From NCBI RefSeq assembly GCF_902713615.1, contig NC_052156.1:29167287-29231286 (forward strand): a stretch of DNA of 64,000 nt, read 5' to 3'. Both the position numbers and the translations under genes were made by a program. Under the pieces are notes generated by a model. It saw nothing but the letters and a program-made list of their open reading frames with translations, was not told the origin of the DNA and ran no database searches. Numbering within the stretch: position 1 is the first letter of the stretch; every line of letters begins with the position of its first letter. Source of the DNA: Scyliorhinus canicula. Lineage: Eukaryota. This document shows positions 4,819 to 56,605 of this stretch, piece by piece.

Positions 4819-5132
4819 TGATGCGACCATCAATTCACTCAAAGACACCAGTAGAAGCAAACCAAGGTTTTAATCAGCTGAGAACAGAGAACTGCCTGCA
4901 ACTATTACAATACCGTGGACTGCCTACAGGTCAACTGCTCTTTCTACTTCCTTTCAAGGGGGAGGAACCATGGGCGGAGCCTGTACATGCCCCAACATAC
5001 CCCCTGTGGGTGAAGCCACACAATGGCCCATAGGTGGAGCCCACAAGGTCAACAACACAACATAGCTGTAACACAATGGCAGAACATGATACTAATACAC
5101 TGGTGAATAGCTAGTACTATTCATTCACCACA
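4819..5132 (-). repeat. 3' LTR of Gypsy family A
   Basis: Direct repeat of 9220-9532, roughly 20+ differences by eye; adjacent to the PPT. Confidence 0.95.
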
Positions 5133-5176
5133 TTCACCCCCTGTTAAAAAAATGAGGTCCGGCGGGGGTGACGGGC

Positions 5177-8100
5177 TCATAAGTTCAGCAGGTCTGGCGC
5201 AAGGATTGTGCGCTGCGATCCCCGAAGCTCTGGTGTTGTTGTTGGTCTGGGTGTCGGGCTCATCCGTGCTGGCATCGGAAGTGGGGCCGGTGCGGGCACA
5301 GGCCTGGACTCTGGGAGCATCTCTTCTGGAGCTTCATTCCTATGGACCGGTGTGGCGGGCGGGAGGGAGCGCGGGAGCCATGTCGGGGCGGGGGCGCTGG
5401 ACATGGTAGGTTGGGTGGGATATAGTGGGGAGGCTGAGGTGGTGGTGGTGGAGCCTGCGGGCGCTAGGTTCGAGGGAGACGGTATCTTGTCGGCCATCGG
5501 GGTGTTCAACATAAGCATCCTGGGGGTTGGAGTGCACGAGCTGGACCCTCTCTACCAGAGGGTCGGTCATATGGCTCCTGATGTGTTTTCTGAGGAGGAC
5601 TGGTCCCGTTGTCTTCAGTCAGGATGGAAGCGAGGCCCCTGAAGGTAGCTCCCCTAGAAAAGCAAACAAGCGCTCATGAGGAGTCTCGTTCGTGACCATG
5701 CAAATGAGGGACCTGATAAGAGTGGAGCGCATCAGGGAGGATCTCCTGCCAGTGAGAAACTGGCAGATTCCTGGACCGCAGGGTCAGTAGGACGGTCTTC
5801 CAGACCGTCGCGTTCTCCCTCTCCACCTGCCCGTTTCCCCTGGGGTTGTAACTGGTAGTCCTGCTCGAGGCGATGCCCTTACTGAGCAGGTACTGACGCA
5901 GTTCATTGCTCATGAACGACGAGCCCTGGTCGCTGTGGACATAACTGGGGAAACCAAACAGGGTGAAGACACTATGCAGGGCTCTAATGACAGTGGATGA
6001 GGTCATATCGGGGCAGGGGATTGCAAATGGAAAGCGGGAGAACTCATCTATGATGTTGAGGAAATACGTATTGCGGTTATTGGAGGGGAGGGGCCCTTTG
6101 AAATCGATACTGAGGTGTTCAAAGGGCCGGGATGCCTTTACCAGGTGGGCCTTAGCCAGTCGATAGAAGTGCGGTTTACACTCCGCACAGATTTGGCAGT
6201 CCCTGGTCATAGCCCTGACCTCCTCGGTGGAGTAGGGCAGGTTGCGGGCCTTGATATAATGGACGAGCCGGGTGGCAGAGGTAATCGTGGATAGCCCGTA
6301 GTCGGTCACCTTGCGCGCTGGCGCATGTGCCGTGGGACAGGGCATCTGAGGGCTTGTTGAGCTTCCCAGGACGATATACTATATCGTAGTTATAGGTGGA
6401 GAGTTCGATCCTCCACCTCAAGATCTTATCGTTCTTGATTTTGCCACCCTGCGTATTGTCGAACATGAAGGCTACCAATCGTTGGTTGGTGACGAGGGTA
6501 AACCTCCTACCCACGAGGTAGTGCCTCCAGGGCCGCACGGCTTCCACGATGGCTTGGGCTTCTTTTTCGACCGAGGAGTGTTGAATTTCAGAGGTGGTGA
6601 GGGTGCGCGAAAAGAACGCTACCGGTCTGCCTGCTTGGTTGAGGGTGGCAGTGAGAGTGACCTCTGATGCGTCGCTCTCCACCTGGAAGGGGCAGACTCG
6701 TCCACCGCGCGCATCTCAGCTTTGGCGATGTCCTGCTTGATGCAGCTGAAGGCCTGGCGAGCCTCAGTTGCCAGTGGAAAGCTGGTGGCCTTGATTAGTG
6801 GCCACCACTAATCTTGGGCGGGCGGGCTTTGTCTGCATAATTGGGGACGCACTGGGCGTAATATGAAAAGAACCCAAGGCACCTCTTCAGGGCCTTGGGA
6901 CAGTGAGGGAGAGAGAGTTGCAGGAGGGGGCATATACGGTCAGGGTCGGGCCCTAGGACCCCGTTCTCCACGACGTAGCTGAGGGTGGCTAGTCTGGTTG
7001 TGTGGAAAATGCATTTCTCCTTGTTGTAGGTGAGATTGAGGGTTTGGGCGGTTTGGAGAAATTGGTGGAGGTTGGCGTCGTGGTCCTGCTGATCATGGCC
7101 GCATATGGTGACATTGTCCAAGTACGGAAATGTGGCCCGCAGTCCGTACTGGTCCACCATTTGGTCCATTGCTCTTTAGAACACCGAAACCCCATTCTTG
7201 ACGCCAAAGGGAACCCGGAGGAAATGGAAAAGGCGGCCGTCTGCCTCAAAAGCCGTGTAGTGGCGGTCCGCCGGGCGGATTGTGAGCCGGTGGTATGCAG
7301 ACTTCAGATCCACCGTGGAGAACACCCGGTAGTGTGCGATCTGATTCACCATGTTTGCAATCCGGGGAAGGGGGTACGCATCGAGTTGCGTATACCGGTT
7401 AATGGTTTGGCTGTAATCAACCACCATCCGGAACTTTTCCCCGGTCTTGACGACGACCACCTGAGCTCTCCAGGGGATATTGATGGCCTCGATGACACCC
7501 CCCTGCAAGAGACTCTGGACCTCGGACCTAATGAACGTCCTGTCCTGCATGCTATACCGCCTGCTTCTGGTGGCGACTGGCTTGTAGTCGGCGGTGAGGT
7601 TTGAGAAGAGAGGGGGAAGGTCGACTTTTAGGGTCTCGAGGCTGCATATGGTGAGTGGGGCAGGGGCCCCCCTGAACCTCAGGTTACATTGGAAGTCGAG
7701 TCCCAATAGGAGAGGAGCGCAGAGGTCTGAGAGCACATATAATTTAAAGTTAGCGTACTCAGGGTTGCTAGGGTTGTAGTAGTGCAGCCTTGGATTTGCA
7801 CCGAGTGCGACCCAGAGGCGAGGGAGATGGTTTGTTGCGCCGGGAAAATTGTAAGCAGCGTCTTACCATGTCCGGGTGAATGAAGCTCTCTGTGCTCTCG
7901 GAGTCGAAGAGGCAAGGCGTCTCGTGCCCGTTAACCCGGACGGCCATCGTGGAGCTCCGGAGGTGCTTGGGCCACGACTGGTCCAGGGTGACCGCGCTGA
8001 GCTGCGGGTAGCCGGCGGCGTGGTCGGAAGTGCTGGGACGGCCCCGCGATGACTGTCCATATTGATCATGCGCGTCAAGCGGCGTAGCAGATGGCGGCCA

Positions 8101-9196
8101 AGATGGTGGCCCCCATTGGTCGAGCGTGGCGGGCGGTGAGGAAAATGGCATCCAAGATGGTGGCCCCCATGGATCACACGTGGCCGGCCGCGTGGCGGAG
8201 GATGGCCAAGATGGCGGCCCCCATTTGTCGAGCGTGGCGGGCAGTGAGGAAGATGGCGGCCCCCATGGATCGCACGTGGCCGGCCGGGTGGGGGAGGATG
8301 GCCAAGATGGCAGCCCCCATGCGTCGCACGTGCTGCGAGGGCAGGAAGATGGCCACCCCCACTGATAGCACGAGGCTGATGACGTGTCTGCAGGGGGCGG
8401 AGTCGGCAGACACGCTGCCACACTGCGGGGTCTGCTGGCCTGTGAGTCTGAGGATCGGGCCTGTGAGTTCAAGTTCTTAGACCTGGCCAGGCAACTTTTG
8501 GCGAAATGTCCTTTTTTCCGCAGCTGCTGCAGTTCATGTTGGGGGCCGGGCAGTGCTGTCGGGGGTGTTGAGACTGGCCGCAAAAATAGCAGGGTAGCCC
8601 CCCCATGATGGGCGGGTGGCCGCGCGGCGCAGGCCTGGGGTAGTCTTTGGTCGGGGGCCCACGAAGGGGTCGGTGGTCAGCCTGGAATGCAGTAAGGCTC
8701 TGAAACGCAGCCACCAGAGAGGTGGCTAACGTTACCGTGTTGTCCAGGTCCTGGGCCCCCTTTTCGAGCAGGTGCTGTCTCACATAATTCGACTGGACTC
8801 CCGCCACGTAGGCGTCTCGGACGGTGAGTTCCATGTGCTGAATGGCCGTAATGGCCTGGTAATTACAGTTGCGTGCGAGGGCTTTGAGGTCACGTAGGTA
8901 GTCATCTAGCGACTCCCCGGGGCGCTGGCGGCATAGACCTCATTCACGGGCCGTACGTAGAGGCGTTCGAGCGTCGCGAGGGCGTCTGCGTATGAGGAGG
9001 CCTCGTCGAGCTGAACAGAAATGCGATGGCTCACCCGTGTGTGGAGGAGGCTCAGCTTCTGTTCATCAGTGACGGAAGGCGTGGAAGCGGCAGCGAGATA
9101 GGCCTTGAAGCATCAAAGCCAGTCCGAAAATTTTTATTTCACCTCCGCAGCCTGAGGATCGAGTTGCAGTCGATCAGGTTTGAGGGCTGATTCCAT
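5177..9196 (-). pseudogene. Disrupted gag-pol of Gypsy family A
   Basis: ORF fragments 8469-8834 (gag), 7768-8583 (linker/PR), 7176-7736 and 6795-7169 (RT, FPYLDNVTIC), 6176-6682 (RNase H), 5674-6345 (IN core), 5177-5570 (IN C-terminus); early stop after MESALKPDRLQLDPQAAEVK. Confidence 0.93.
8088..8360 (-). repeat. In-frame minisatellite (~54-bp units) encoding xDxWGPPSW repeats in the gag-PR linker of family A
   Basis: AAGATGG cores recur at ~8100, 8154, 8208, 8250, 8304, 8346. Confidence 0.9.
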
Positions 9197-9219
9197 AGTT
9201 GTCTTTAAGCTGATTAAAT

Positions 9220-9532
9220 TGATGCGACCATCAATTCACTCAAAGACACGAGTAGAAGCAAACCGAGGTTTTAATCAGCTTAGAACAGAGCCTACCTGCG
9301 ACTAGTACAATACTGTGGACCGCCTACAGGTCAACTGCTCTTTATACTTCCTTTCAAGGGGGAGGAGCCATGGGTGGAGCCTGTACATGCACCAACATAT
9401 CCCCTTGTGGGTGAAGCCACACAATAGCCCATAGGTGGAGCCCACAAGGTCAACAACACAACATAGCTGTAACACAATGGCAGAACATGATGCTAATACA
9501 CTGGTGAATTACTAGTACTTACTTTAACCACA
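9220..9532 (-). repeat. 5' LTR of Gypsy family A
   Basis: TATAAA on minus at 9341-9346, ATTAAA at 9270-9275; gag ATG follows a 23-nt leader. Confidence 0.95.
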
Positions 9533-9931
9533 GCTACTTCAATGAATTTGAGACAATTGTAGATTTTGTTTGGTTGATTTGAAAACACCCAGAGGCGATT
9601 ACAGGTTAGTGTGAGATGAAGAAGACCCCTTTGCCCCTATTTCCAAGAATGTCTCGCAAATCTTTCATCTGCTGATCTACTTGACACTCTTCCAAAATAA
9701 AGAAAGCCAATTCAAATATCGGAGCAAATAAAATTACTGTCGGGAAAGTGGGACCTTTGCAGAAGGCTAGCCCCTTAGTCTTCTATAAAGGATCTATCCA
9801 TTCTTAAAGGATGTTTCCTATCTGAGACCGTCTACACTGGTGGCAGCTCATATCAAGTAACAAAAACATTTTTGGTTCCCATTATTAAATGAGAGGAAAC
9901 TGGCATTGTTCACAGTTGTGAATTTCCCCCT

Positions 9932-12400: not shown

Positions 12401-13624
12401 GAAAGGGGAAATATTTTACACTGGGATGAAGATTTGATATTTGGTTATTTTACATGGGTCAGGAATTTCCTACAAATAGAAACAGGCAGTGGTTTTGTAC
12501 ACTGGATTACTGTCCTTCAATCAGCGTCTTTATGTGGGAGTTGATTGGACAAAGATTTTACAATAAGTCAAATCCACTTTTTCAGAACTAAATTTCTTCA
12601 CAAACCAATAAATTTTAGTAATTAGAGATATTCTGTGTTTCATTTACAAGGAATTGAGCCAATCCTGGACAAAAAAAAGTCTGAATTTACATACGGCAAG
12701 CAGTAGGTACAGGCCACAAAGTGATTTTATGCAGGAAATGCGGACAACAAATTCTCTGAATTAGGGTACTTATCCGAATTTGCTTTCAAGTTGTGTATAT
12801 GGTGAGTTAGCTGGTCCTTTCTCATATGTTTTTCAGATGAGCAACATATATGCTTAGATTTGTCTTCCACATAATGGAAGTGTTGTATTAGTAGACTTTG
12901 ACAGGGCAGGCAAATACAATTGCCTCATCTATCCATCTGCTCGGGTGCACATTTCAGTAAATTAGGCTGACAGTAGCTCAAAGGGTAGAGTTTCTCTTCT
13001 AAAATAATGGATCTAATAAAATGAATGTAGGACAGTTGCAAAAACTACATTTGTTATGAAAAGCTATAAATTCTACTTATGCTTGGAATGCATCTGAATC
13101 CCTATCACTGCTATTTTAATAACACATTGCAAGTGAAAAAATACTTACATTAGGTTGGAAACCCTATCCCTCCTATTTTTATTCTTTCCCTTCTTGTTCA
13201 GGCCTCGTCAGTTTTCCATCTTGCATAACTGAGAGAGTAAGTGATTCTGTTACTTTACTCATCAGTGAGCCACCAGAAGTTGTGCAGTAGCATCTCATAA
13301 GAGGCCTGCCTTTGCTTCCAACAGACATATGGACAGGACTGGGAAATCATGTGAGGGGAATATGACTGGTATTCCTCCATTTTGTGAGGCAGAGACTGTT
13401 ACTGTCTCGAATGCCATTCATCAATGCCCCACCTCTGTCTATTTTTGAGTATTAGTTTGACGTGGGACACAACTACACCTTTTTGTCCAACTATTTCTAG
13501 CTGGCCTGTGTTAACAGTACTAGCTGAAGCGGCTTACCATTGCTTTTGCCATTGTACACAGCCTGTTGTGGAGAGATTTGGATATGAAGGACTCAGGTAT
13601 CAGTATTATTTGAAAATAATAAAA

Positions 13625-16600
13625 CCATTTTTTTTTAAAATTGAGTTTTTGGTATATAAAACAAATATAAATATGAACAAACAATAGGAGATGAAGAGAA
13701 AAAAACAAAATTAAAAAGTAAAACAAACTATTTACACATAGATCGGCTTCAACTATTTACATTCATCCAACAGTTTCTTTTCTTTTTGCTCCTTATAGTA
13801 TTTGCAGTGATGATTGTGGTCCCCTACGTTTCGCTGCCCACCGGGTTTTCTCAACTTTTTTTCCCCTTTGGTTCAGGTTGTTGCACATTCAACCCCCCCC
13901 CCCCCCCCCCAAAACCGGGTCTCATGCTTCTCCTGTTGGGCTACCACCACTGGGCTGGTTGAATATTTATTTGGTGGGAATGAGAGTGCTGCCCTGGCTA
14001 GGGCCCGGAGGAAGGTCCCTCTGCAGGAGTTCCCCTCCATAAGCACCCACTCGGTTCCTTTATCTACCCCTTTACTCTCTCCGCAGTCGCTGCCCAGTAG
14101 TAAATTGTAGGTTTGGGATGGCTAGGACACCCATGGATCTCGTTCTCTGCAGTACTCTCTTTAGGATCTTTGCATTGTTCCGACCCCACACAAACGCCAT
14201 AACCAGTTTGTCCGATGAATTGAAAACGGCCATGTGAATGTAGATCGGGATGGATCTAAACATAGAACATCGAAAAATACAGCACAGAAGAGGCCCTTCA
14301 GCCCACGATATTGTGCCAAACTTTTGTCCGAGATTAAGAACAAATTAATCTACACCCCATCATTCTACCGTAATCCATGTACCTATCCAATAGCCGCTTG
14401 AAGGTCCCTAATGTTTCCGACTCAACTACTTCCACAGGCAGTGCATTCCACGTTCGCTGCTAGCTTTCTTTAATATTGTATTTCCTCTTCAGGAGAGGAA
14501 CCTACGCAGTCCGTTAATTTTGATTGTTTAAATCCTCCACGCCAGTAAGAGTGGGAGTGTGTCCCATCTCTGCAGGTCCTTTTTTACTTCCTCTGTCAGG
14601 CTGGTCAGGTTCCACTTGTGGATCCTGTCCAATCATGAGCAATTTGGATTCCCAGGTAACAGAATTTATGTCGGACCTGTTTAAACAGCAGCCCCTCCAG
14701 CTCAAGAAAGCTTCAAACTCTTTCAAGAGCGCCATGATTCCTTCCATGCTGTTTTGCGGGTCCGAGATGTAGAGGAGCAGGTCATCCGCATAGACCAAGG
14801 CTCTGTGCTCTCTGTCTCCTCTCTGGATCCCGTTCCAATTCTTTGCTGGCCCAAGCGCGATCGCTAGTGGTTCGATCACTGGGGCGAACAGCAGCGGTGA
14901 TAACGGGCACTCCTGCCTTGTGCCTCTGTGCAGCTAGAAGTAGCTAGAGCTGGTGGTATTTGTCCGTACCCTCGCCGTGGGAACGTTGTACAGGATTTTC
15001 ACCGGGCGGTGAACCCTGTTCCTAGCCCAAACTGCTCCGTACCTCTATGGGGTACTTCCACTCTACTCTGTCGAAGGCCTTTTCAGCTTCCAGGGAGACG
15101 ATCACCTCAGGTGTTCTCTCCCCAGATGGGGCCTTGATCATGTTGAGCAGACACCTGATGTTCGATGTTAACGGACTACCCTTGACAAAGCCAGTCTGTT
15201 CTTCTGTTATGACCTCTGGTACACAGTCTTCCAGCCTTTTGGCTAGGATCGTGGCCAGTATTTTTGTGTCTGCGTTTAGCAGCGAGATGGGTCTTAGTCT
15301 TCTTTTTTTTAAATTTAGAGTACCCAATTAATTTTTTCCAATTAAGGGGCAATTTAGCCTGTTCAATCCACCTACCTTGCACATCTTTGGGTTGTGGGGG
15401 CGAAACCCCCGCAAACACGGGGAGAATGTGCAAACTCCACACGGACAGTGACCCAGAGCCGGGATCGATCCTGGGACCTCAGCGCCGTGAGACCGCAGTG
15501 CTAACCCACTGAGCCACCGTGCTGCCCCGTCTTTGTCTTTTTTAGGTATCAGCGAGATTGAGGCTTGTACTAGCTTAGGCGGCAGGGTGCCCCTCGCCAG
15601 CAAGTCTGTGAACATCTCCCACAAGTGTGGGGCCAGTGCTATCGCGAATGTTTTGCGGAAGTCCGCCGGGAAACCATCCGGTCCAGGCGCCTTCCCCACC
15701 TGCATGGAGATAATACTCTCCATGACCTCTCCCAGTTCTAACAGTGCTTACAGGCTCCGTATCCTGACTGGCATGACCAGTCCATCAAGGGACAGCATTA
15801 TCCCCGAGCCTCCCGCTGGGGGCTCCAAGGTGCACAGCCCCTGGTAGAAGGGCTAAAATGCCTTGTTGACGTTATCCGGCTCCGTTATTAATTTGCCTTT
15901 GCTCTCCCTAATCTGGGCTATTTCCCTCGTGGCTGTCTGCCTTCTCGGCTAGTGGGCCAGCAGGCGGCTAGCCTTGTCTCCGTGTTCATAAGGGCCCCCT
16001 TGTCTGGCGGAACTGGAATCTCACACCATTTCTGTACAGCTCAGCCTTCACTTTATTAAATTCAGCTCGGCGCTTGACCTTGTCAGCCCCAGTGTCCCGA
16101 TAAATGCGGATCTTGTGACCTTCCCAGCTACAGCTTTTGCATTGTCTGGCCCAACGCAGGATTCTTTCCCGGTTCTGGTACCATTGCATCTTTGCAATTA
16201 TCACCCTCGGCTGTTCCTGGCTTTGGGCTTTGGTCGAAGCAACCGGCATGCTGTCGATTTCTGGTGGGTTGGGGAAGCTGTCCCTTCCCACCAGATTGCC
16301 CAGCTTTTGGGCCACATAGTCTGTGGGGTTCCTACCTTCGATCCACTCCAGTAGGCCCATGATTCATAGGTTTTGCTGCCTTGACCGGTTCCCTGGTCCT
16401 CAAATTTTCAGCTCAGGTTCCCTTGTGTCGCGACCAGCCTTGCCGCCTCCTTTTTCAGGGCGACAATCCGGTCGCCCTGGTCAGTTGCTGCCCTCTCCAG
16501 TTCTTTAACTGTTTCCTCCTGGGCTTTCAGTCGCTTTTCGGTATTGTCCAGAAGCACCTGCATGGTCGCCGGAGCTTTGGTCACCGCAACCTTCACTGCA

Positions 16601-23427: not shown

Positions 23428-23713
23428 TGATGAACCATCAATCGAACGCGAGACAAGTTGCTGTACAAAAGTTAGGCTTTAATAAGCTAGAAGTTAGCCC
23501 TGCGGTCGACTACAGTAAATAGACGACCGCCGGGCGTTCTGGTTATTTATACCTCGCTCTGGAGGCGGGGTTAACTCAGCCTCACGACCAATCGGAGAGC
23601 CATCACATGACTGGTCTCAACCAATCGGTTGAGAGGCACATGACCGACCAGGGCCAATGGTAAGCCAGTGTTCTGCACCAATGGCAGACAGCTACGCAAA
23701 TCATACCACCACA
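23428..23713 (-). repeat. 3' LTR of Gypsy family B
   Basis: Direct repeat of 27986-28271, adjacent to the PPT. Confidence 0.96.
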
Positions 23714-23899
23714 TTCACCCCTTGCGGAGAAGCCGGGGGGGTAATCAACGAGAGCCGGGGGGGAGGGGGGGAGGTTGGGAGAACTGGTGGTATGAGTAGC
23801 AGCCAGAGAAGGGAGAAAAAAATGTTTTGGCTTCCCACTGGCCCAGACAATTAACAATAGTACAAAATGTCCCAACAAGGTCCATGGAGTTGTTGTAAA

Positions 23900-26800
23900 T
23901 TAAATAGACTCGATCAGTCTTTTCGTGGCCCGTGACGTCCTGGCAGACCGCCGCAGTGGAGTTGGTGACGTTGGTTCAGCCGATGGTGGTGGTTCCGCTG
24001 ACGTCCTGGAGTCCGGGAGCGATGGTCCTTGAACAGTCTCCGTCACCCAGGCTGGCGGTGGAGACGCCATGGATGGGGAAGGGGTGGCCAGGGTGGGGCG
24101 CTGGGGGAAAAAAAAAACAGGGGGGGGGGGCTCTGTGGCGAAGGGGGGGGGGGGGGGAGGAGGCCGCACAACAGCGGGTGCCAGGTCCCGGAGGGAGACC
24201 GTGTCCTACCGACCGTCGGGGTACTCCACATACGCATACTGCGGGTTAGCGTGGAGTAACTGGACTTGTTCAACCAACGGGTCGGACCTGTGCGCCTGCA
24301 CATGCTTCCGGAGCAAGATGGGTCCAGGGGCGGCCAGCCACGTCGGGAGAGGGGATCCGGAGGATGACTTCCTGGGGAAAACAAGACGACGTACATGAGG
24401 TGTCTGATTTGTTGCGGTACAGAGGAGTGAGCGGATAGAATGTAGGGCATCGGGGATCACCTCTTGCCATCGGGAAATAGGGAGATCTCTGGACCGGAGG
24501 GCCAGTAGTATGGTCTTCCAGATGGTACCATTCTCCCGCTCGACCTGTCCGTTACCCCGAGGGTTATAGCTGGTCGTCCTGCTAGAGGCAATGCCCCTGT
24601 TGAGCAGGAATTGACTCAGTTCATCGCTCATAAATGAGGACCCCCGATCGCTATGTATGTATGCAGGGTAGCCGAACAGGGAGAAGATGGAGAGGAGGGC
24701 CTTAACGACGGTCGATGTGGTCATGTCGGGGCAGGGAATGGCGAAGGGGAAGCGGGACTATTCGTCGATTACCGGCAGGAAGTAAATGTTGCGGTTGCTA
24801 GAGGGAAGGGGCCCTTTGAAGTCAATGCTGAGACGTTCGAAGGGGCGGGATGCTTTGATCAGATGTGCGCGCTCAGGGCGGTAGAAGTGTGGTTTGCACT
24901 CTGCGCAGATGTGGCAGTCACGGGTTACTGTCCTGACTTCCTCGATGGAGAAAGGCAGGTTGCGGGCCTTAATGAAATGGTAGAAACGGGTCACCCCTGG
25001 ATGGCAGAGGTCAGCGTGGAGGCGGTCTATCTGCGTGCTGGCGCAGGTACCGCGGGACAGGGCATCAGGAGGCTAATTGAGCTTCCCAGGACGATACAAG
25101 ATCTCATAGTTGTACGTGGACAACTCGATCCGCCACCGTAAGCTCTGTCATTCTTAATCTTGCCCCTTTGTGCATTATCAAACATGAAGGCTACTGACCG
25201 TTGGTCTGTGAGGAGGGTAAACCTCCTGCCAGCCAAATAGTGCCTCCAATGTCGCACAGCTTCGACAATGGCCTGGGCTTCCTTTTCCACAGAGGGGTGG
25301 TGGAGTTCGGAAGCCTGGAGGGTTCTGGAGAAGAAGGCCACAGGTCTGCCCGCTTGGTTCAGGGTGGCCGCCAGAGCTACTTCTGATGCGTCGCTCTCGA
25401 CCTGAAAGGGGAGGGACTCGTTGATGGCACGCATCGTGGCCTTTGCGATGTCCGCTTTGATGCGGCTAAAGGCCTGGCAGACCTCTGTCGACGGCGGGAA
25501 GGTCGTGGTTTGAATGAGGGGACGGGCCTTGTCAGCGTAATTGGGAACCCATTGGGCATAGTAAGCGTAGAAACCCAGGCAGCGTTTGAGGGATTTGAGG
25601 GTATTGGGAAGAGGGAGTTCCATCAGGGGGCGCATGCGTTCGGGGTCGGGGCCTATCACTCCGTTACGCACTACGTAGCCGAGGATGGCTAGACGGTCGG
25701 TGCTAAACACGCACTTATCCTTACTGTATGTGAGGTTAAGGAGTTTTGCGGTTTAGAGGCATTTCCGGAGGTTGGCGTCATGGTCCTGCTGGTCGTGGCC
25801 GCAGATGGTGACATTATCGAGATACGGTAAGGTAGCCCGTAATCCGTACTTGTCGACCATTCGGTCCATCTCCCGTTGGAAGACCGAGACCCCATTTGTG
25901 ACACCAAATGGAACCCTAAGGAAGTGGTAGAGGCGCCCATCAGCCTCGAACGCGGTGTACTTGCGGTCACTCGCGCGGAGGGGGAGCTGGTGATAAGCGG
26001 ACTTAAGGTCCACAGTGGAGAAGACCTTGTATTTCGCTATATCATTTACCATGGCGGAAATACGGGGCGAGGATACACGTCCAGTTGCATAAACCGGTTG
26101 ATGTTCTGGCTATAGTCGATGACCATCAGGTTTTTCTCCCCAGTCCGGACCACCAGCACTTGGGCTCGCCAGGGACTGTTGCTGCCCTCGATGACCCCTT
26201 CCTTCAGCAACCTCTGGACCTCGGACCTGATGAAGGTCCGGTCCTGGGCGCTGTACCGCCTGCTCCGTGTCGTGACGGGTTTGCAATCGGGGGTGAGATT
26301 AGCAAACAAGGAGGGGGGGTCCACTTTGAGGGACGCGAGGCTGCAGACAGTGAGGGGGGGTATAGGGCCGCCGAATTGAAAGGTCAGGCTCTGCAGGTTG
26401 CACTGGAAGTCCAGTCCTAGGAGTGCCGGTGCGTAAAGGTCAGGGAGGACAAGGACTTTGTAATTTTTTAAAACCTTCCCTTGGACCGTGAGGTCCGCGA
26501 TGCAGCTAACCCGATTTTGTGTTTTACAGGATGGACAGGGAGCGCGCAGCGTCTTACCATGGCAGGGTGAACAAAGCTTTCCGTGCTCCCAGAGTCCAGC
26601 AGGCAGCCCGTCTCGTGGCCGTTGAGGTGGATCAGCGTTGTTGTTTTGGCGAGCGTGCGTGGCCGTGACTGGTCGAGTTGAATGGTCGCGAGCCGTGGAG
26701 AAGAACCATCGTCGCAGTTGTCGTCGGCCGAGTAGTAGCTGGCAGAATCTTGCGTGCCAGTCCAGGAAGGTGGTGCCCAGTACCCGCACGTGGAGTCGGG

Positions 26801-27961
26801 GCCCCAAGATGGAGGCGCCCAGGACCCGCACGTGGAGTCGGCGCCCCAAGATGGCGGCGCCCAGGACCCGCACGTAGAGTCGGCGCCCCAAGATGGCGGC
26901 GCACGCGGGGCCCTCGTGGTTGTGGGGGACGGGGTTAGCGGTGCCGGCGGGCCGACCGGAGCGGCTGAGAGCGGGGGCAGAGAGGCGCGCAGGCCAGGCG
27001 TAGGGGCCGGGGGCAGCGAGGAGAGAGTTGCGCGGTGCGCTGGGAGGGCCCGGAGGAGGGGGAGGCGTGCAGGCCGGGCGCAGGGGTCCGGGGGGGGGGG
27101 GGGGGGGGGGGGAAAGAGATTGGCGCTGCGTACTGGAAGGGCCAGCAAGGGCCCGGAGTGGGGGATCCCCGGTCGCTGTGCGGTGCAGCAGCGACCAATT
27201 TGGCCTGGCAGACGGATGAAAAGTGGCCCTTCTTCCCGCAGCTCTTACAGAGGGCGGAGCGGGCCGGGCAGCGCGGGCGAGGGTGTTTCGCGAACCCACA
27301 GAAATAGCAGCAGGGCCCCGTGGACTTGTCGGGGCGTCCCGCGGCGCAGGCCTGAGGGAGGTCGGGAGCGGCGGATGGCGGTGGGGAAGCGTGCCAGGAG
27401 GTCCAGGGTGCTGCAGCGCGGCTGGGGGCATAGGCTCGGGCGTTTAAATCAGCGACCTCCAGGGAGGTGGAGAGAGTCCGTGCCTCAGTTAGGCTGAGGT
27501 CGTCTTTCTCCAGCATCCGCTGGCGGATAGCGGCAGACTGCATCCCAGCCATGTAAGCATTTCTAATCTCTTCTGATCTCTAATCAGAAGTTCCATGTGC
27601 TCCGTGGCTGAAACTTCCTCCCCAGGACAGCGAGGGCCTGGTAAAATTGGTCTAATGACTCACCGGGGAGCTGTCGTCTGGTAGCCAGCAGATGTCGGGC
27701 GAATACTCTGTTGACCAGTTTAAGAAACTGTCCATTCAGCTTAAGCATGGCCGCATCGTAATCTTTTTCCTCCCTGATCAGCGCGTAGGCTGCTGTGCCC
27801 ACGCTGGAGTGGAGGATGTGAAGCTTCTGTGCCATGGTGGGGGGGCTATTTGCGGACGCCAGGTATCCCTCGACACATGCCAGCCAATGTTGAAAGATTT
27901 CTGAAGCGTTCTGAGTTTGCGGGCTGATGCGGAGGCATTCGGGCTTGAACCGGAGCTCCAT
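23900..27961 (-). pseudogene. Disrupted gag-pol of Gypsy family B
   Basis: ORF fragments 27584-27967, 26935-27552, 26468-27148, part of 26046-27431, 25753-26052, 25027-25710, 24758-24994, 24206-24724, 23900-24169. Confidence 0.94.
26770..26905 (-). repeat. In-frame 42-bp tandem repeat x3 encoding CGSWAPPSWGADST in family B
   Basis: CAAGATGG(A/C)GGC at 26805, 26847, 26889. Confidence 0.92.
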
Positions 27962-27985
27962 CTTCAAAATTCTAGCTTATTAAAT

Positions 27986-28271
27986 TGATGAACCATCAAT
28001 CGAACGCGAGACGAGTTGCTGTACAAAAGTTAGGCTTTAATAAGCTAGAAGTTAGCCCTGCGGTCGACTACAGTAAATGGACGACCGCCGGGTGTTCTGG
28101 TTATTTATACCTCGCTCTGGAGGCGGGGTTAACTCAGCCTCTCGACCAATCGGAGAGCCGTCACATGATTGGTCTCAACCAATCGGTCAAGAGGCACATG
28201 ACCGACCAGGGCCAATGGTAAGCCAGTGTTCTGCACCAATGGCAGACAGCTATGCAAATCATACCACCACA
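27986..28271 (-). repeat. 5' LTR of Gypsy family B
   Basis: TATAAA on minus 28104-28109, GC box, multiple CCAAT boxes, ATTAAA at 28036-28041. Confidence 0.96.
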
Positions 28272-29109: not shown

Positions 29110-29669
29110 CTCGCATTTGGAGAAAAAAAAAACCAAAGCTATTATTCTAATTTGTAAGGAATTAACATATGCTATAAAAGTCCCAAATATATTTTAAAAT
29201 ACTATTTTTAACAGTTAAGACTCAAATTTGGAAGTGCTGCTTGGAAAAGATAATGCATGTAAATTAAACTGGCCTTGGAGTATCAGTCTCAAATCTAGGG
29301 GCGCTCTCCCACAATTGTCCTCCAGCTGTTGTTACTGTTTTGCTCACAATTTTGCGTTCAAACTCCCTCCCCGGCAAGTACACGAGCAAAGGTATTTACA
29401 ACAAAAGCAGCAGAACCTGGACTTTTGCATTAGCCAGTTTACAATGGGCTGTACAGGTTTAGTTTATTAAATGATGAAGAAGGGGATGTCTGACAAAATG
29501 CAACGTTGCTCATTTACAGTGCCTAAATGCAGCTTTGTGGCCATTATTCCCCATATCAAACTTCGGTGTGGTACCAATGTTCTCTAACTTCCATTAGTTG
29601 TGCACAGTCCTTTTGCCTACCACACAAATTAATAAAGTCAATAATGTGGTATGTGAATCTCAGCAATTG

Positions 29670-29988
29670 CTTTTGTTTATTGTCACGTGTACCAGGGTAC
29701 AGTGAAAAGTATTTTTCTGCGAGCTGCTCAACAGATCATTAAGTACATGGGAAGAAAAGGGAATAAAAGAAAATACAGAATAGGGCAACACAAGATACAC
29801 AACGTAACTACATAACACCGGCATCGGGTGAAGCATACAGGGGTGTAGTGTTAATCAGGTCAGTCCATAAGAAGGTCATTTAGGAGTCTGGTAACAGCGG
29901 GGAAGAAGCTGTTCGTGCGTGTTTTCAGACTTTTGTACACCTACCCGATGGAAGAAGTTGGACGAGTGAGTAGGCCGGGTGGGAGGGG
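29670..29988 (-). mobile_element. Rex1/Babar 3' end, same family as 44845-46087
   Basis: Near-identical 3'UTR sequence. Confidence 0.85.
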
Positions 29989-32879: not shown

Positions 32880-35800
32880 TTTTTTATAAATGTTTTTTAT
32901 TGAGTTTTTGAACAAAGTATATTTGCCGTTATGTACAGAGGGGCAGCACGGTAGCATTGTGGATAGCACAACTGCTTCACAGTTCCTGGGTCCCAGGTTC
33001 GATTCCGGCTTGGGTCGCTGTCTGTGCAGAGTCTGCACGTTCTCCCCGTGTGTGCGTGGGTTTCCTCTGGGTGCTCCGGTTTCCTCCCACAGTCCAAAGA
33101 TGTGCAGGTTAGGTGGATTGGCCATGATAAATTGCCCTTAGTGTTGGGTGGGGTTACTGGGTTATGGGGATAGGGTGGTGGTGTTGACCTTGGGTAGGGT
33201 GCTCTTTCCAAGAGCCGGTGCAGACTCGATGGGCTGAATGGCCTCGTTCTGCACTGCAAATTCAATATGATATATGTATATATAGAAGAGAGAGAGAGAG
33301 AAGGGCACACACAAACATATCACAAAAAAAAAGTAATAATAAGAAATATAAAATCAAATCAAGTAACTGATAAGGTATTATACACCAATTCAAAAGCAGC
33401 AACTCTGTACACTTGGCAAAATTATTTACAACACACCAGCAGGCATCTGTTTGGGGGGCGGGTGTATACATTTGGGTGCCGGAGAAACAATTACAGAGGG
33501 CAACACTCGAATGGGTCTGGTGTTGGTGTTGTCACTTGCTTCTCACGGACGGATTTCGCTGCCGTTGTCGTCTCGCGCTCACCTCCGCTTCAGCCGTTCC
33601 TCCCGTATTCTCCTTTTTCTCTGTTCCTGTGTTTGCCAAGTTTGTTATCGTTTCCCTGCCTCCCCACCTACCTGGTTCTCCTCTATTGTTCCCCCCCCTT
33701 CTATCTCTCATGCTTTGGCTACTTTCCCCTGATTCTTGGCTACCTGGCTATTCTTCTGCTTGTTCGTTGGCCACAAACAGGCCCCGAAACAATTGGGTGA
33801 ATGGCTCCCACGTTCTGTGAAAGCCGTCATCTGACCCTCGGATGGCAAATTTGATTTTCTCCATTTGGAGAGATTCCGAGAGGTCGGATAGCCAGTCTGC
33901 AGCTTTGGGTGGTGCTGCTGACCACCAGTCGAACAGGATTCTGCGGCGGGCAATCAGGGAGGCAAAGGCAAGGGTGCCCGCCCTCCTCCCCTGGAATAGA
34001 TTTGGCTGGTCTGAAACCCCGAAGACCGCCACTTTTTGGGCATGGCTCCACCCTCACCCCCACCACTTTGGACATTGTCTCGAAGAAGGCTATCCAGTAC
34101 CCCGCAAGTCTAGGGCAAGACCAGAACATGTGGGTGTAGTTGGCCGGGCCTCCTTGACACTGTTCACATCTATCCTCCACCTCCGGGGAGAACCTACTCG
34201 TACGGGTTCTTGTTAAGTCGGCTTTATGTACCACTTTTAGTTGCATCAGGCTGGGCCTTGCGCAAGTGGAGGTGGAGTTGACCCTATGCAGTGCTTCGCT
34301 CCAGAGTCCCCACCCTATTTCAATCCCCAGGCCCTCCTCCCATTTCTTTCTTGTTCCCTCCAGTACGGTGTCGGCCCTTTCTACCAGTCAGTCATACACG
34401 GCGCTACAGTTTCCTTTATCTAGGATGCTTGCGCCCGGTAACTCTTCCAGTAATGTCTGTCGTGGCGGTTGTGGATATGTCTCTGTCTCCTTTTGTAGGA
34501 AGTTTTTGAGTTGCAGGTACCTTAGCTCATTCCCCCTGACTAGCTGGAATTTTTCCGTCAGTTCGTCCAGTGTTGCGATCCTGCCGTCCGTGTATAGGTC
34601 CCTGACTCAGTGTCCCTCCATCCTGTCCCCACCTTTTGAAAGTGGTGTCAAGTCAGTGCTGGTGTGAACCTATGGTTGCTGCAGATGGGATCTTTGTCCG
34701 ACATTTTAGTCAGGCCAAATTGCTGCCGTAGTTGGTTCCAGGACTGGAGGGTAGCTATCACCACCAGGCTGCTGGGGTGTTTTTTGAGTGGGGATAGGAG
34801 TGCTGACCTCCGGAGGGAGGTCCCCATGCAGGAGGCCTCTTCCGTGCGCACCCATTCGGCTTCTGGCTCCTTGATCCATCCCCTTATTCGCTCGGCCGTC
34901 GCCGCCCAGTGGTAGAATTGTAGGTTTGGGAGGGCTAGACCCCCCCCGGATTTTGTTTTTGTAGGATCTTCTTCGGGATCCTAGCATTCTTCCCCCCCAC
35001 CCCCATACGAACACCATGATTAGTTTGCCCAGCGCTTTGAAAAAGGCCTTGGGGATGTAGATCGGGATGGATCTAAGTAGGAAGAGGGCAGCACGTTCAT
35101 TTTGATCGTCTGGACTCTCCCCACGAGGGAGAGTGGGAGTGTGTTCCATCTTTGCAGGTCCTTTTTTATTTCCTCTGTCAGACTGGTGAGGTTCCATTTG
35201 TGGATCCCTTTCCAGTCATGGGCCATTTGGATCCCCATGAATTTGTATCGGGCTTGTTTAAACGGCAGTCCCGTTAGTGCTGCCCCCCTACTTGCGGGTG
35301 TACTGGGAAGATCTCGCTTTTGCTCATGTTGAGTTTGTAGCCCGAGAAGGCGCCAAGCTCTTTCAGGAGCACGATGATTCCGTCCATGCTGTTTTGTGGG
35401 TCCGGAATGTAGAGGAGCAGGTCATCTGCATAGAGTGAGACTCTGTGCTCTCTGCCACCCCTTTGGATCCCCCTCCAGCTTTTTGCTGCTCTGAGCGCAA
35501 TTGCTAGTGGCTCGATCGCTAGAGCAAACAGCAGCGGGGACAGTGGGCATCCTTGTCTGGTGCACCTATGCAACTGGAAGTATCGGGAGTTGGTGTTGGT
35601 TGCCCGTACGCTCACCATGGGTGCGCTATATAGGAGTTTTACCCAGGAGGTGAATCCTGTTCCAAGCCCGAACCACTCCAGTACCTCTATGAGGTATTTC
35701 CATTTGACTCTGTCGAAGGCCTTTTCTGCGTCTAGGTAGACGATCATCTCTGGTGTTCTCTCCCCGGACGGGATCATTATCACGTTCAGCAGGCACCTGA

Positions 35801-36605
35801 TGTTTGAAGTAAGCTGTCTACCTTTGACAAAGCCCGTCTGGTCCTCTGCGACCACCTCAGGTACACAGTCTTCTAGCCTTTTGACTAGAATTTTGGCATC
35901 TGCATTCAGCAGTGAGATGGGTATGTTTGACCCACATTCCGTTGGATCTTTATTTTTCTTAGATATCAGCGAGATTGAGGCCTGTGCTAGCGTGGGTGGC
36001 AGAGTGCCACGAGCCAGCAAGTCTCTCGCAGGTGACCATCTCTTGCAGGTACGGGGCCAGTGCTGTCGCAAATTTTTTGTAGAAGTCCGCCGGGAGCCCG
36101 TCTAGTCCCGGCGCCTTCCCTGCTTGCATGGAGCTAATGCTGTCCATGATCTCTCTCAGTACTAGTGGTGCTTCCAGGCCCCGTTTTCTGCCCTCCCCCA
36201 CGACTGGTATGTCCAGTTCATCAAGCAACCATTTCATCCCGGACTCCCACCTTGGGGGCTCTGAGGTGTACAGCCCTTGGTAAAAGGCCCTGAAGGCTTT
36301 GTTGATCTTTTCTGGTTCTGTTTCTAATGTGCCTCTGGTATCCCTGATTTGTGCAATTTCTCTGGTGGCTGCCTGCTTTCTCAGCTGGTGTGCCAACAGG
36401 CAGCTGGCTTTGTCTCCGTGTTCGTACAGGGTCCCAAGTGCCAGGAGCTCTACGGTCGGGGCCTCAGAGTATTTACGGTCTATCTCCAGTATGGAGTCGA
36501 CCAGTTGCTGCTCAGCCGCCCTTTCCTCCCTATCCCTTCGCGCTTTGAAAGCGATGATTTCCCCTCTTAGTACGGCCTTAGAACATGGAGGGTGAGACCT
36601 CCTCT
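32880..36605 (-). mobile_element. 5'-truncated L1/Tx1-clade LINE
   Basis: RT QGCPLSPLLF and YADDLLLY; C-terminal CEQC..HMFWSC; 3' UTR with AATAAA and A-rich end; SINE nested at 32940-33268. Confidence 0.92.
32940..33268 (+). mobile_element. Full-length HE1-like V-SINE
   Basis: A/B boxes, V-domain, CR1-type tail. Confidence 0.9.
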
Positions 36606-36699: not shown

Positions 36700-37000
36700 A
36701 ATAATATTTATTGTCACAAGTAGGCTTACATTAACACTGCAATGAAGTTACTGTGAAAAGCCCGTAGTTGTCACATTCCGTCGCCTGTTCGGGTACACAG
36801 AGGGAGAATTCAGAATGTCCAATTCACCCAACAGCACATCTTTCAGGACTTGTGGGAGGAAACCGGAGCATCCGGAAGAAACCCACGCAGATACGGGGAG
36901 AACGTGCAGACTCCGCACAGACAGTGACCCAAGCCGGGAATCGAACCTGGGACCCTGGCACTGTGAGCAACAGTGCTGCTACCCACTGTGCTACGATGCT
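36700..37000 (-). mobile_element. V-SINE variant
   Basis: As 17135-17391. Confidence 0.85.
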
Positions 37001-53085: not shown

Positions 53086-53403
53086 GGCAGCCCAGTAGCA
53101 TAGTGGTTAGCACTGTGGCTTCACAGCACCAGAGTCCCAGGTTCGATTCCCTGCTGGGTCACTGTGCGGAGTCTGCATGTTCTCCCAGTGTCTGTGTGGG
53201 TTTCCTCCGGGAGCTCCGGTTTCCTCCCACAGTCTAAAGACGTGCAGGTGTGGTGGATTGGCCATGCTAAATTGTCCTTAGTGTCCAAAAAAGATTAGGA
53301 GGGGTTATTGGGTTAAGGGGATAGGGTGGAAGTGAGGGCTTAAGTGGGTCAGTGCAGACTCGATGGGCCAAATGGCCTCCTTCTGCATTGTATGTTCTAG
53401 GTT
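53086..53403 (+). mobile_element. Full-length HE1-like V-SINE
   Basis: A/B boxes, V-domain, tail. Confidence 0.9.
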
Positions 53404-56149: not shown

Positions 56150-56605
56150 GTCAGAGGTAGGTTCTTTACCCAGAGAGTAGTGGGGGCATGGAATGCACTG
56201 CCTGCGGTAGTAGTTGAGTCGGAAAAGTTAGGGACCTTCAAGCGGCTATTGGATAGGTACTTGGATTAGGGTAAAATAATGGAGTGTAGGTTAACTTCTT
56301 AAGGGCAGCACGGTAGCATTGTGGATAGCACAATTGCTTCACAGCTCCAGGGTCCCAAGTTCGATTTCGACTTGGGTCACTGTCTGTGTGGAGTCTGCAC
56401 ATCCTCCCCGTGACTGCGTGGGTTTCCTCCGGGTACTCCGGTTTCCTCCCACAGTCCAAAGATGTGCAGGTTGGGTGGATTGGCCATGAAAAATTGTCCA
56501 AAATTCTATGATTAACCTAGGACAAAAGTTCGGCGCAACATCGTGGGCCGAAGGGCCTGTTCTGTGCTGTATTTCTCTATCTATCTATCTATCTATCTAT
56601 CTATA
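56150..56605 (+). mobile_element. CR1 3' end with nested HE1-like SINE (56302-56511) and (CTAT)n tail
   Basis: Matches the reverse complement of 14262-14450 apart from the SINE. Confidence 0.85.

What the first reader, a model, noticed from the sequence alone, without database searches (positions are those of the whole stretch)
27970..28050. tRNA-independent priming architecture: the PBS position pairs with the element's own LTR (family B)
Seen: one nt after the 5' LTR end the element-sense sequence is TTTAATAAGCTAGAA (27984-27970), with no TGG, so it is not a tRNA PBS. It is the perfect 15-nt complement of LTR positions 28050-28036 (sense TTCTAGCTTATTAAA). The 3' end of that LTR tract would pair right beside the LTR boundary, exactly where a minus-strand primer 3' end must sit. 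Known: Tf1/sushi-type chromoviruses self-prime from their own transcript. Inference: this is a Mag-like element (two CCHC knuckles, 5-bp TSD, no chromodomain seen). The tract lies ~30 nt downstream of the TATA-predicted start rather than at the extreme 5' end, so this may be a distinct self-priming mechanism. Novelty needs a literature and Repbase check.
Basis: partly seen in the sequence, partly recalled or inferred. Interest (0 to 1): 0.88.

Follow-up and report, generated by a model that had tools for sequence, protein, structure and literature searches.

The report
Self-priming site in shark retrotransposon
A decayed gypsy-type retrotransposon has, where a tRNA primer site normally sits, a 15-base sequence that pairs perfectly with its own long terminal repeat. 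About 27 related animal elements keep this pairing through matching changes, so the whole group probably starts DNA copying from its own RNA, as yeast Tf1 does.

Summary
Element B lies on the minus strand (LTRs 27986-28271 and 23428-23713). One base after its 5' LTR sits a 15-nt tract (27984-27970) that is the exact reverse complement of LTR bases 28050-28036. There is no TGG.

This is not chance. A second, roughly 75%-identical element in the same window (A, 4819-9532) has the same layout with a compensatory change. I also found it in about 25 further distinct relatives from public contigs, spread over the whole RT-RNase H tree. Several of these are intact and young.

The pairing is always Watson-Crick over 11-18 nt. 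It starts after LTR-CA plus one or two spacer bases (one in 18 of 22 tabulated). The LTR arm usually ends in a poly(A)-like hexamer (ATTAAA or AATAAA in 13 of 24).

The best reading is Tf1-type self-priming in a group without a chromodomain and with two CCHC knuckles (Mag-like). I could not test it.

Self-priming itself is known. Its presence across this group, and the poly(A)-hexamer overlap, were not in the open literature I could search. Interest is moderate.

The parts
23428..28271 (-). Element B: a 4844-bp degraded Ty3/gypsy LTR retrotransposon (gag, PR, RT, RNase H, IN)
   Evidence: LTR pair 286 nt, 97% identical. Pfam hits for RVT_1, RT_RNaseH and rve on ORF pieces. Several frameshifts.
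27986..28271 (-). 5' LTR of B (TGTGG...ATCA)
23428..23713 (-). 3' LTR of B, preceded by the polypurine tract AAGGGGTGAA (23714-23723)
28036..28050 (-). Proposed self-primer tract in the 5' LTR (TTCTAGCTTATTAAA). Its last six bases are the poly(A)-signal variant ATTAAA.
   Evidence: The homologous tract is conserved in relatives.
23478..23492 (-). The same tract in the 3' LTR. Under self-priming this copy templates the LTR tracts of progeny, and it probably serves as the poly(A) signal.
27970..27984 (-). Primer-binding site (TTTAATAAGCTAGAA), the perfect complement of the LTR tract. No TGG.
27985..27985 (-). Single spacer A between the LTR-terminal CA and the primer site. An A lies in this position in 18 of the 22 tabulated elements.
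   Evidence: inner flank
27984..28000 (-). U5-terminal hairpin ATTGATG-GTT-CATCAAT abutting the primer site. It is conserved in element A and is analogous in position to the U5-IR stem-loop.
28104..28109 (-). TATAAA box 59 nt upstream of the tract (64 nt in element A)
28141..28190 (-). Cluster of CCAAT-type boxes (ATTGG and CCAAT) upstream of the TATA box
   Evidence: read directly. Function is inferred.
27959..27961 (-). gag start codon, 8 nt after the primer site
27208..27309 (-). Two intact CCHC zinc knuckles of the nucleocapsid
   Evidence: The same pair appears in the consensus of 12 relatives.
4819..9532 (-). Element A: a second, related element (internal region about 75% identical to B; LTRs 313 and 314 nt; perfect target duplication GTAGC)
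9270..9282 (-). Self-primer tract of A (TAAGCTGATTAAA)
9206..9218 (-). Primer-binding site of A (TTTAATCAGCTTA), 13/13 complementary to its own LTR tract. It differs from B by a compensatory pair change.

Best explanation
The inverted repeat is the self-primer and primer-binding-site pair of an LTR retrotransposon that starts minus-strand DNA synthesis from its own RNA rather than from a tRNA.

Shown here:
- The primer-site position (LTR-CA, then a spacer A, then the site) holds a sequence perfectly complementary to a tract 50 nt before the end of the same LTR.
- This relation is maintained by compensatory changes throughout a large group of related animal elements, including intact, recently inserted copies.

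Inferred, by analogy with Tf1:
1. In the genomic RNA the R-region tract folds back onto the primer site.
2. The element's RNase H cuts the RNA just after the tract's terminal ...TAAA.
3. The freed 3'-OH is extended across the spacer A, U5 and the remainder of R.
4. This short strong-stop DNA transfers to the 3' R.
5. During plus-strand synthesis the primer RNA is copied back into DNA. This regenerates a perfectly complementary primer site in each new copy, which would explain why the pairing is strictly Watson-Crick with sharp inner ends.

In most relatives the tract ends in a poly(A)-signal hexamer. The same bases therefore probably signal polyadenylation in the 3' LTR, and in the 5' copy they are sequestered by pairing. 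This too is inference.

The copy in this window is dead.
For: - 15/15 complementarity at the exact primer-site position, with no TGG.
- Element A in the same window has 13/13 pairing, with LTR T->G matched by primer-site A->C.
- The same architecture appears in about 25 further distinct elements, with 11-18 nt perfect pairing: L001, L002-9, L010, L011, L013/36/79, L014, L016, L017, L018/20, L019, L021-24, L027, L035, L042, L043, L052/53, L075, L076, L088. L015 is an older copy of the L013 family. L028 and L083 pair with one mismatch.
- In 22 elements anchored at the inner end, all 242 pairs are Watson-Crick (by selection, since perfect arms were chosen). What is informative is that positions 6-9 each show 3-4 different pair types.
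- Three sister pairs differ by clean double changes: L016/L018, L017/L019, and winA/winB.
- The nucleotide after the tract never pairs with the base before the primer site in any of the 22, so the proposed 3'-OH position is fixed.
- Carriers include intact young copies: L013, L016 and L018 have 1213-1238-aa ORFs and LTRs at least 99% identical, and L079 has 100% identical LTRs.
- The signature is spread over the whole RT-RNase H tree of 36 loci.
- The duplex is present in the minimum-energy fold of the tract-to-site segment in all 23 elements folded.
- The mechanism has precedent. [quoted passage not shown]
Against: - There is no biochemical evidence. No transcription start, poly(A) site or primer-linked cDNA is known for any member.
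- The window copies are degraded.
- In the shark elements the TATA box predicts an RNA 5' end about 28-34 nt upstream of the tract, unlike Tf1.
- The three-duplex 'pretzel' of Tf1 was not demonstrated. Instead I see local hairpins inside the loop.
- The full 129-nt fold of element A prefers alternative local pairings.
- Some complementarity continues past a mismatch (19 nt in the L013 family, 18 nt in B). This is not predicted by simple copy-back of a short primer.
Confidence: 0.8

Rival explanations
1. The pairing is a structural RNA element only. It might mask the 5' copy of the poly(A) signal, or act as a packaging or dimerisation signal. Priming would then be done by some other, unidentified primer.
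For: The tract usually ends in a poly(A)-like hexamer. Occlusion of a 5' poly(A) signal by RNA structure is known in retroviruses (my own knowledge). The duplex is predicted to be stable.
Against: - The 3' arm sits exactly where a primer 3' end must sit: one or two bases after LTR-CA in all 22 tabulated elements.
- The 8-25 nt leader holds no other candidate primer site and no TGG.
- A purely structural helix would be expected to tolerate G-U pairs and a variable register. None were seen inside the 11-18 nt perfect arms recovered for about 25 of the elements, and the inner end is invariant.
Confidence: 0.1
2. The primer is a host RNA (a tRNA half, tRNA fragment or other small RNA) whose 3' end resembles ...AAGYTGATTAAA. 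The LTR tract would then be a mimic or a coincidence.
For: Primer sites of different elements share a loose consensus (TTTAATCAACTTA-like), as they would if a common host primer were used. Half-tRNA priming is known in copia-type elements (PMC6317226).
Against: - Primer sites differ between elements at several positions, and each matches its own LTR exactly, including between sister elements in one assembly (L016 vs L018).
- No TGG or CCA-end signature is present.
- The only tRNA-like gene in the window shows no complementarity of 6 nt or more to the leader.
- Host tRNA sets of the species concerned could not be searched.
Confidence: 0.04
3. It is self-priming, but by a variant mechanism. The primer tract lies about 30 nt inside the transcript, so the primer either carries a 5' extension or is released by two cuts. 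It is a sub-case of the best explanation, not an alternative to self-priming.
For: - A TATAAA box is conserved in shark elements A and B, 59 and 64 nt upstream of the tract. CCAAT-type boxes lie further upstream in B.
- CA initiator-like dinucleotides occur about 30 nt after the TATA box in both.
- Complementarity that continues beyond the perfect core in several families shows RNA upstream of the core can matter.
Against: - The start site is only predicted.
- No TATA box is conserved at this distance in the metagenome relatives. In the shortest LTR (112 nt, L003) an initiator-like TCAGTA puts a possible +1 exactly at the first base of the tract.
- A 28-nt unpaired 5' extension copied into plus-strand strong-stop DNA would leave a 3' flap that blocks the second strand transfer (inference from the standard scheme).
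Confidence: 0.28

Closest known systems
Tf1, Tf2 and Tj1 of fission yeasts (founders of the Tf1/sushi self-priming group)
   Same: There is no tRNA primer site. [quoted passage not shown] Duplex length is similar (11 nt in Tf1, 11-18 nt here). A stem-loop next to the primer site in U5 occurs in the shark copies (PMC7175516, PMC10085805, PMC4600332).
   Different: The Tf1 group are chromoviruses, with a chromodomain on the integrase. None is detectable here or in 128 relatives. [quoted passage not shown] Here the primer's 3' end usually coincides with a poly(A)-type hexamer, and many relatives have a local RCCU...AGGY hairpin right after it. The three-duplex 'pretzel' was not shown.
Sushi-ichi and other vertebrate Tf1/sushi elements (Butler et al. 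2001, cited in PMC10085805; paper not held)
   Same: Vertebrate gypsy-type elements predicted to self-prime from their LTR.
   Different: These are chromodomain-bearing elements from a different clade. I could not read the original paper to compare primer position or sequence.
[quoted passage not shown]
   Same: Small elements (4.3-4.8 kb) with short LTRs (112-313 nt here, against a mean of 174 nt). LTR ends of the type TGTNATG...ACAACA are common among relatives. There is no chromodomain, and the host range across animals is wide: ctenophore, mussel, cockroach, nematodes and rays among named hits.
   Different: Membership was not tested against reference Mag, SURL or Jule sequences. I found no open paper that reports self-priming for this group. 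Mag elements are generally described with tRNA primer sites (my recollection, unverified).
Predicted self-priming in the plant Tcn1 (gypsy) and TAR (copia) lineages (PMC6317226)
   Same: Predicted from primer-site-to-LTR complementarity alone and characteristic of whole lineages. This shows that self-priming recurs outside Tf1.
   Different: These are plant lineages of different superfamilies or clades.

Membership tests
Self-priming LTR retrotransposons (functional class defined by Tf1) | The sequence adjoining the 5' LTR is complementary to a tract within the same LTR, instead of to a tRNA 3' end | tested here: met
   15/15 in B, 13/13 in A, and 11-18 nt in about 25 relatives
Self-priming LTR retrotransposons (functional class defined by Tf1) | The pairing is maintained by compensatory change among relatives | tested here: met
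   Positions 6-9 carry 3-4 Watson-Crick pair types each. Sister pairs L016/L018, L017/L019 and winA/winB differ by double changes.
Self-priming LTR retrotransposons (functional class defined by Tf1) | The primer is the extreme 5' end of the mRNA and is released by an RNase H cut of an RNA duplex | not testable with these tools
   No transcript or cDNA data are available. The TATA box position in the shark copies predicts a start about 28-34 nt upstream.
Self-priming LTR retrotransposons (functional class defined by Tf1) | Three-duplex 'pretzel' or U5-IR-like structure around the primer site | tested here: inconclusive
   A 7-bp hairpin abuts the primer site in A and B. In relatives the loop hairpins vary and their fold energies do not differ from shuffles.
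Tf1/sushi chromovirus clade (phylogenetic group) | Chromodomain at the integrase C-terminus | tested here: not met
   No Pfam chromo hit in C-terminal pieces of A or B, in 8 full-length relatives or in 120 listed homologues
Tf1/sushi chromovirus clade (phylogenetic group) | RT/IN phylogeny groups the element with Tf1, sushi-ichi and Tcn1 | not tested
   No reference sequences of these elements were obtainable with the tools
Mag-like (Mag C / SURL / Jule) Ty3/gypsy | Non-chromoviral gag-pol element with two CCHC knuckles, order PR-RT-RH-IN, about 4.5-5 kb, short LTRs | tested here: met
Mag-like (Mag C / SURL / Jule) Ty3/gypsy | Pol phylogeny groups the element with reference Mag, SURL and Jule | not tested
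   No reference sequences were available. The LTR end motifs only loosely fit the published Mag C consensus and also resemble the CsRn1 5' motif TGTGGYG (PMC3601003).
tRNA-primed LTR elements | TGG-initiated primer site complementary to a tRNA 3' end (or to an internal tRNA half) | tested here: not met
   No TGG lies between the LTR and the gag ATG in B. None of the 22 tabulated primer sites starts with TGG. The window's one tRNA-like gene shows no complementarity. Host tRNA sets were not searchable.

The most novel reading that the evidence does not exclude
A large, ancient, chromodomain-less (Mag-like) gypsy lineage spread across animals replicates without tRNA. It uses a self-primer whose 3' end is the element's own poly(A) hexamer. 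In the shark families that primer would lie about 30 nt inside the transcript, so it must either be excised by two cuts or act with a 5' extension. That mechanistic variant has not been described for Tf1-type elements. It would also mean self-priming is either ancestral to a much wider part of Ty3/gypsy than the Tf1/sushi chromoviruses, or evolved independently.
Probability: 0.25. Interest if true: 0.7.

Novelty: new variant of a known kind. Interest (0 to 1): 0.5.

Why it matters
Self-priming is usually presented as a hallmark of the Tf1/sushi chromoviruses, with predictions also made for some plant lineages. If a widespread non-chromoviral animal lineage uses it too, several things follow:
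- Tools that call LTR elements 'intact' by tRNA primer-site matching will systematically miss or mislabel this lineage.
- These elements would escape host defences aimed at tRNA primer sites, such as 3'-tRNA fragments.
- The evolutionary question of whether hairpin or self-priming preceded tRNA priming gains a new, well-sampled data point.
- The overlap of the primer's 3' end with the poly(A) hexamer suggests a compact way to silence the 5' poly(A) signal and define the primer with the same bases.

Tried and rejected
- **Transcription start and poly(A) site:** no transcript-derived contigs for these families were found. All contigs fetched were genomic or metagenomic.
- **Close shark or ray copies:** the nearest named proteins are from Mobula hypostoma and Hypanus sabinus, but the DNA of the Mobula locus could not be served. 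One contig look-up was never sent.
- **Reference-based clade assignment:** Mag, SURL, Jule, sushi-ichi and Tf1 sequences could not be obtained. Source names on hits were uninformative ('17.6', 'hypothetical protein').
- **Key older papers:** the Jule paper and the Levin, Lin & Levin and Wilhelm papers are not held. I did not try to fetch Butler 2001. 'Not reported' therefore means only 'not found in the open library'.
- **First scan for the primer site upstream of the protein match:** this failed because the query protein lacks the gag N-terminus. I replaced it with LTR-pair and inverted-repeat scans.
- **Rejected, chance palindrome:**
- **Rejected, tRNA priming:** no TGG, and each primer site covaries with its own LTR.
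- **Rejected, priming from the polyadenylated 3' end:** the bases 5' of the primer site are not T-rich.
- **Loci without the signature (L030, L032, L038, L040, L046, L047/48, L061, L064, L066/69):** these are degraded or 5'-truncated copies and are not counter-examples. L074 is a reversed LTR of the L013 type. L082 keeps 13 of 16 positions.

Full report
**1. The observation**

Element B lies on the minus strand. Its two 286-nt LTRs (27986-28271 and 23428-23713) are 97% identical. Read in element sense, the 5' LTR ends ...TTCATCA at 27986. A single A follows (27985), then TTTAATAAGCTAGAA (27984-27970). Eight bases later comes the gag ATG (27961-27959).

LTR bases 28050-28036 read TTCTAGCTTATTAAA, the exact reverse complement. 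The repeat finder reports 18 nt at 94%. The 15-mer occurs nowhere else in the window except in the other LTR. With up to 2 mismatches allowed, 0.14 matches are expected by chance. A fixed 15-mer finding a perfect complement in a 286-nt LTR has a probability of about 2.5e-7.

There is no TGG in the leader.
- the TATAAA box at 28109-28104;
- two intact CCHC knuckles;
- a 5-bp target duplication, CATAT/CGTAT, with one mismatch;
- no chromodomain.

The copy is dead, with several frameshifts.

**2. A second element in the same window**

Repeat analysis of the whole window revealed element A (4819-9532, minus strand). It has LTRs of 313 and 314 nt, a perfect target duplication (GTAGC), and an internal region about 75% identical to B. 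Its 5' LTR also ends ...GCATCA, followed by an A and then TTTAATCAGCTTA (9218-9206). Its LTR contains TAAGCTGATTAAA (9282-9270), which is 13/13 complementary.

Relative to B, the LTR has G where B has T, and the primer site has C where B has A. That is a compensatory change. The LTRs of A and B can be aligned. The alignment shows:
- a conserved GTATAAA box, 59 nt (B) and 64 nt (A) upstream of the tract;
- the tract itself;
- a conserved U5-terminal hairpin, ATTGATGG..CATCAAT, that abuts the primer site.

**3. Relatives elsewhere**

- A gag search led to contig L001, whose gag is 37% identical. Its LTR tract CTTTAGTGAATTAAA faces TTTAATTCACTAAAG one base after the LTR, 15/15.
- An RT-RNase H search of 1.8 billion representatives gave many full-length gag-pol proteins. 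The closest named ones are from the rays Mobula hypostoma and Hypanus sabinus, so the host is probably an elasmobranch.
- Contigs for two intact relatives show the same layout: L002-L009 with 14 nt and L010 with 13 nt.
- A profile-guided scan of metagenome contigs returned 80 loci.
- LTR-pair detection, inverted-repeat scans and inspection of permuted contigs found the signature in about 25 further distinct elements.

In these elements the perfect pairing spans 11-18 nt and the loop is 21-68 nt.

The loci without the signature are degraded, 5'-truncated or mis-oriented copies.

Carriers include intact, young elements. L013, L016 and L018 have 1213-1238-aa ORFs and LTRs at least 99% identical. 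L079 has 100% identical LTRs.

An RT-RNase H tree of 36 loci places winA and winB as sisters (100/100) inside a well-supported 15-row clade. The signature is scattered over the entire tree, so it is ancestral to the sampled group.

**4. Nature of the pairing**

I anchored 22 elements at the inner end of the duplex.
- All 242 pairs are Watson-Crick. This is by selection, because perfect arms were chosen. The informative point is that positions 6-9 each show 3-4 different pair types.
- Sister elements differ by clean double changes: L016 vs L018, L017 vs L019, and winA vs winB.
- The inner end is fixed. In all 22, the base after the tract (G or A in 18) does not pair with the base before the primer site (an A in 18).
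- The LTR arm ends in ...TAAA or ...TTAA. The last six bases are ATTAAA or AATAAA in 13 of 24 elements. The rest carry variants (GTTAAA, TTTAAA, GATAAA and others).
- About half the relatives have a small hairpin, RCCU-loop-AGGY, directly after the tract.
- The tract-to-site duplex appears in the minimum-energy fold of the tract-to-site segment in all 23 elements folded, and in the 126-nt fold of B. The 129-nt fold of A prefers alternative pairings.

**5. Mechanism**

The geometry is what a minus-strand primer requires: a 3' end positioned one or two bases from the LTR-terminal CA. The only known mechanism that produces and maintains perfect complementarity between this site and the element's own LTR is Tf1-type self-priming. 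[quoted passage not shown]

Copy-back of the primer during plus-strand strong-stop synthesis would regenerate the site each cycle. That fits the strict Watson-Crick pairing and the fixed inner edge. These steps are inferred, not shown.

Placing a poly(A) hexamer at the primer's 3' end implies three things, all inference:
- R extends only about 10-30 nt beyond the cut.
- U5 is very short.
- Pairing in the 5' copy could mask the signal.

**6.

The shark LTRs carry a conserved TATA box, and B also has CCAAT-type boxes. Together these predict an RNA start about 28-34 nt upstream of the tract.

Three points weigh against this:
- The relatives show no conserved TATA box at that spacing.
- In the 112-nt LTR of L003 an initiator-like TCAGTA places a possible +1 on the first base of the tract.
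- A long unpaired 5' extension would be copied into plus-strand strong-stop DNA and leave a 3' flap at the second transfer (my inference).

One point weighs for RNA upstream of the perfect core mattering. Complementarity resumes after one mismatch in several families: 18 nt in B, 19 nt in the L013 family, and 17 nt perfect in the older copy L015.

I put the internal-primer variant at roughly 0.25-0.3. It needs start-site mapping.

**7. Comparison with what is known**

Functionally this works like Tf1/sushi elements. Phylogenetically it does not look like one:
- No chromodomain was detected in A or B, in 8 full-length relatives, or in 120 listed homologues.
- The gag has two CCHC knuckles.
- The named hosts span ctenophore, bivalve, insect, nematode and ray.

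Size, short LTRs and the common TGTNATG...ACAACA termini fit the 'Mag C' (SURL-containing) group described in PMC3601003. I could not place the elements against reference sequences, so 'Mag-like' remains probable rather than shown.

Self-priming is also predicted for the plant Tcn1 and TAR lineages (PMC6317226). In the open library I found no report of self-priming in Mag, SURL or Jule-type elements. The Jule paper and the older Levin and Wilhelm papers I tried to fetch were not held, and I did not try to fetch the Butler 2001 sushi paper.

**8. Verdict**

This is a real, non-chance and evolutionarily maintained feature. The mechanism class is known. The new elements are the lineage, the poly(A)-hexamer overlap and possibly the primer's position in the transcript. 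I class it as a new variant of a known kind, with interest about 0.5.

Noticed in passing
window 26775-26902 (element B) and 8089-8376 (element A): Both shark elements carry tandem repeats between the zinc knuckles and the protease: period 42 with 3 copies in B, and period 54/96 in A. On the plus strand, antisense to the element, the repeat unit contains AAGATGGCGGC. From memory, that matches the YY1 binding consensus.
   Followed up: partly
window 36926-36997 (-): ARAGORN calls a tRNA-Ser(gct)-like gene. It lies inside a repeated region (D8/D18), so it may be a tRNA-derived SINE head rather than a real tRNA gene. It shows no complementarity to the primer site of B.
   Followed up: partly
window 14506-15999 vs 35088-36435; also 33022-33144, 53162-53284, 56384-56506, 29667-29815 and 44849-44997: Several other dispersed repeat families (74-93% identical copies) are present, indicating further transposable elements in the window. 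I did not characterise them.
   Followed up: no
L018 minus strand (revcomp coordinates 9600-9680) and L020 minus strand (13579-13659): A different element in the same assembly has a 12-nt perfect inverted repeat (ACAAGAGACTAT / ATAGTCTCTTGT, with the 3' arm preceded by GCAA) just upstream of a 416-aa ORF. It may be another self-priming family, one whose tract does not end in TAAA.
   Followed up: no
loop between tract and primer site in L011, L013, L014, L017, L019, L021, L023, L042, L043, L076: A small hairpin with an invariant stem, RCCU...AGGY, starts at the first base after the proposed cleavage site. It is absent or weak in the shark copies. It could be a cleavage or poly(A)-related signal.
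   Followed up: partly
L002-L009: One intact 1246-aa gag-pol element with 112-nt LTRs recurs with an identical protein in eight marine metagenome assemblies, two of them TARA Oceans records. This suggests a currently active copy in an abundant marine animal.
   Followed up: no
window 9270-9282 vs 4869-4881 (element A): The 3' LTR tract of A reads TCAGCTGATTAAA, while the 5' LTR reads TAAGCTGATTAAA. The primer site matches the 5' LTR version, so the 3' copy mutated after insertion.
   Followed up: yes
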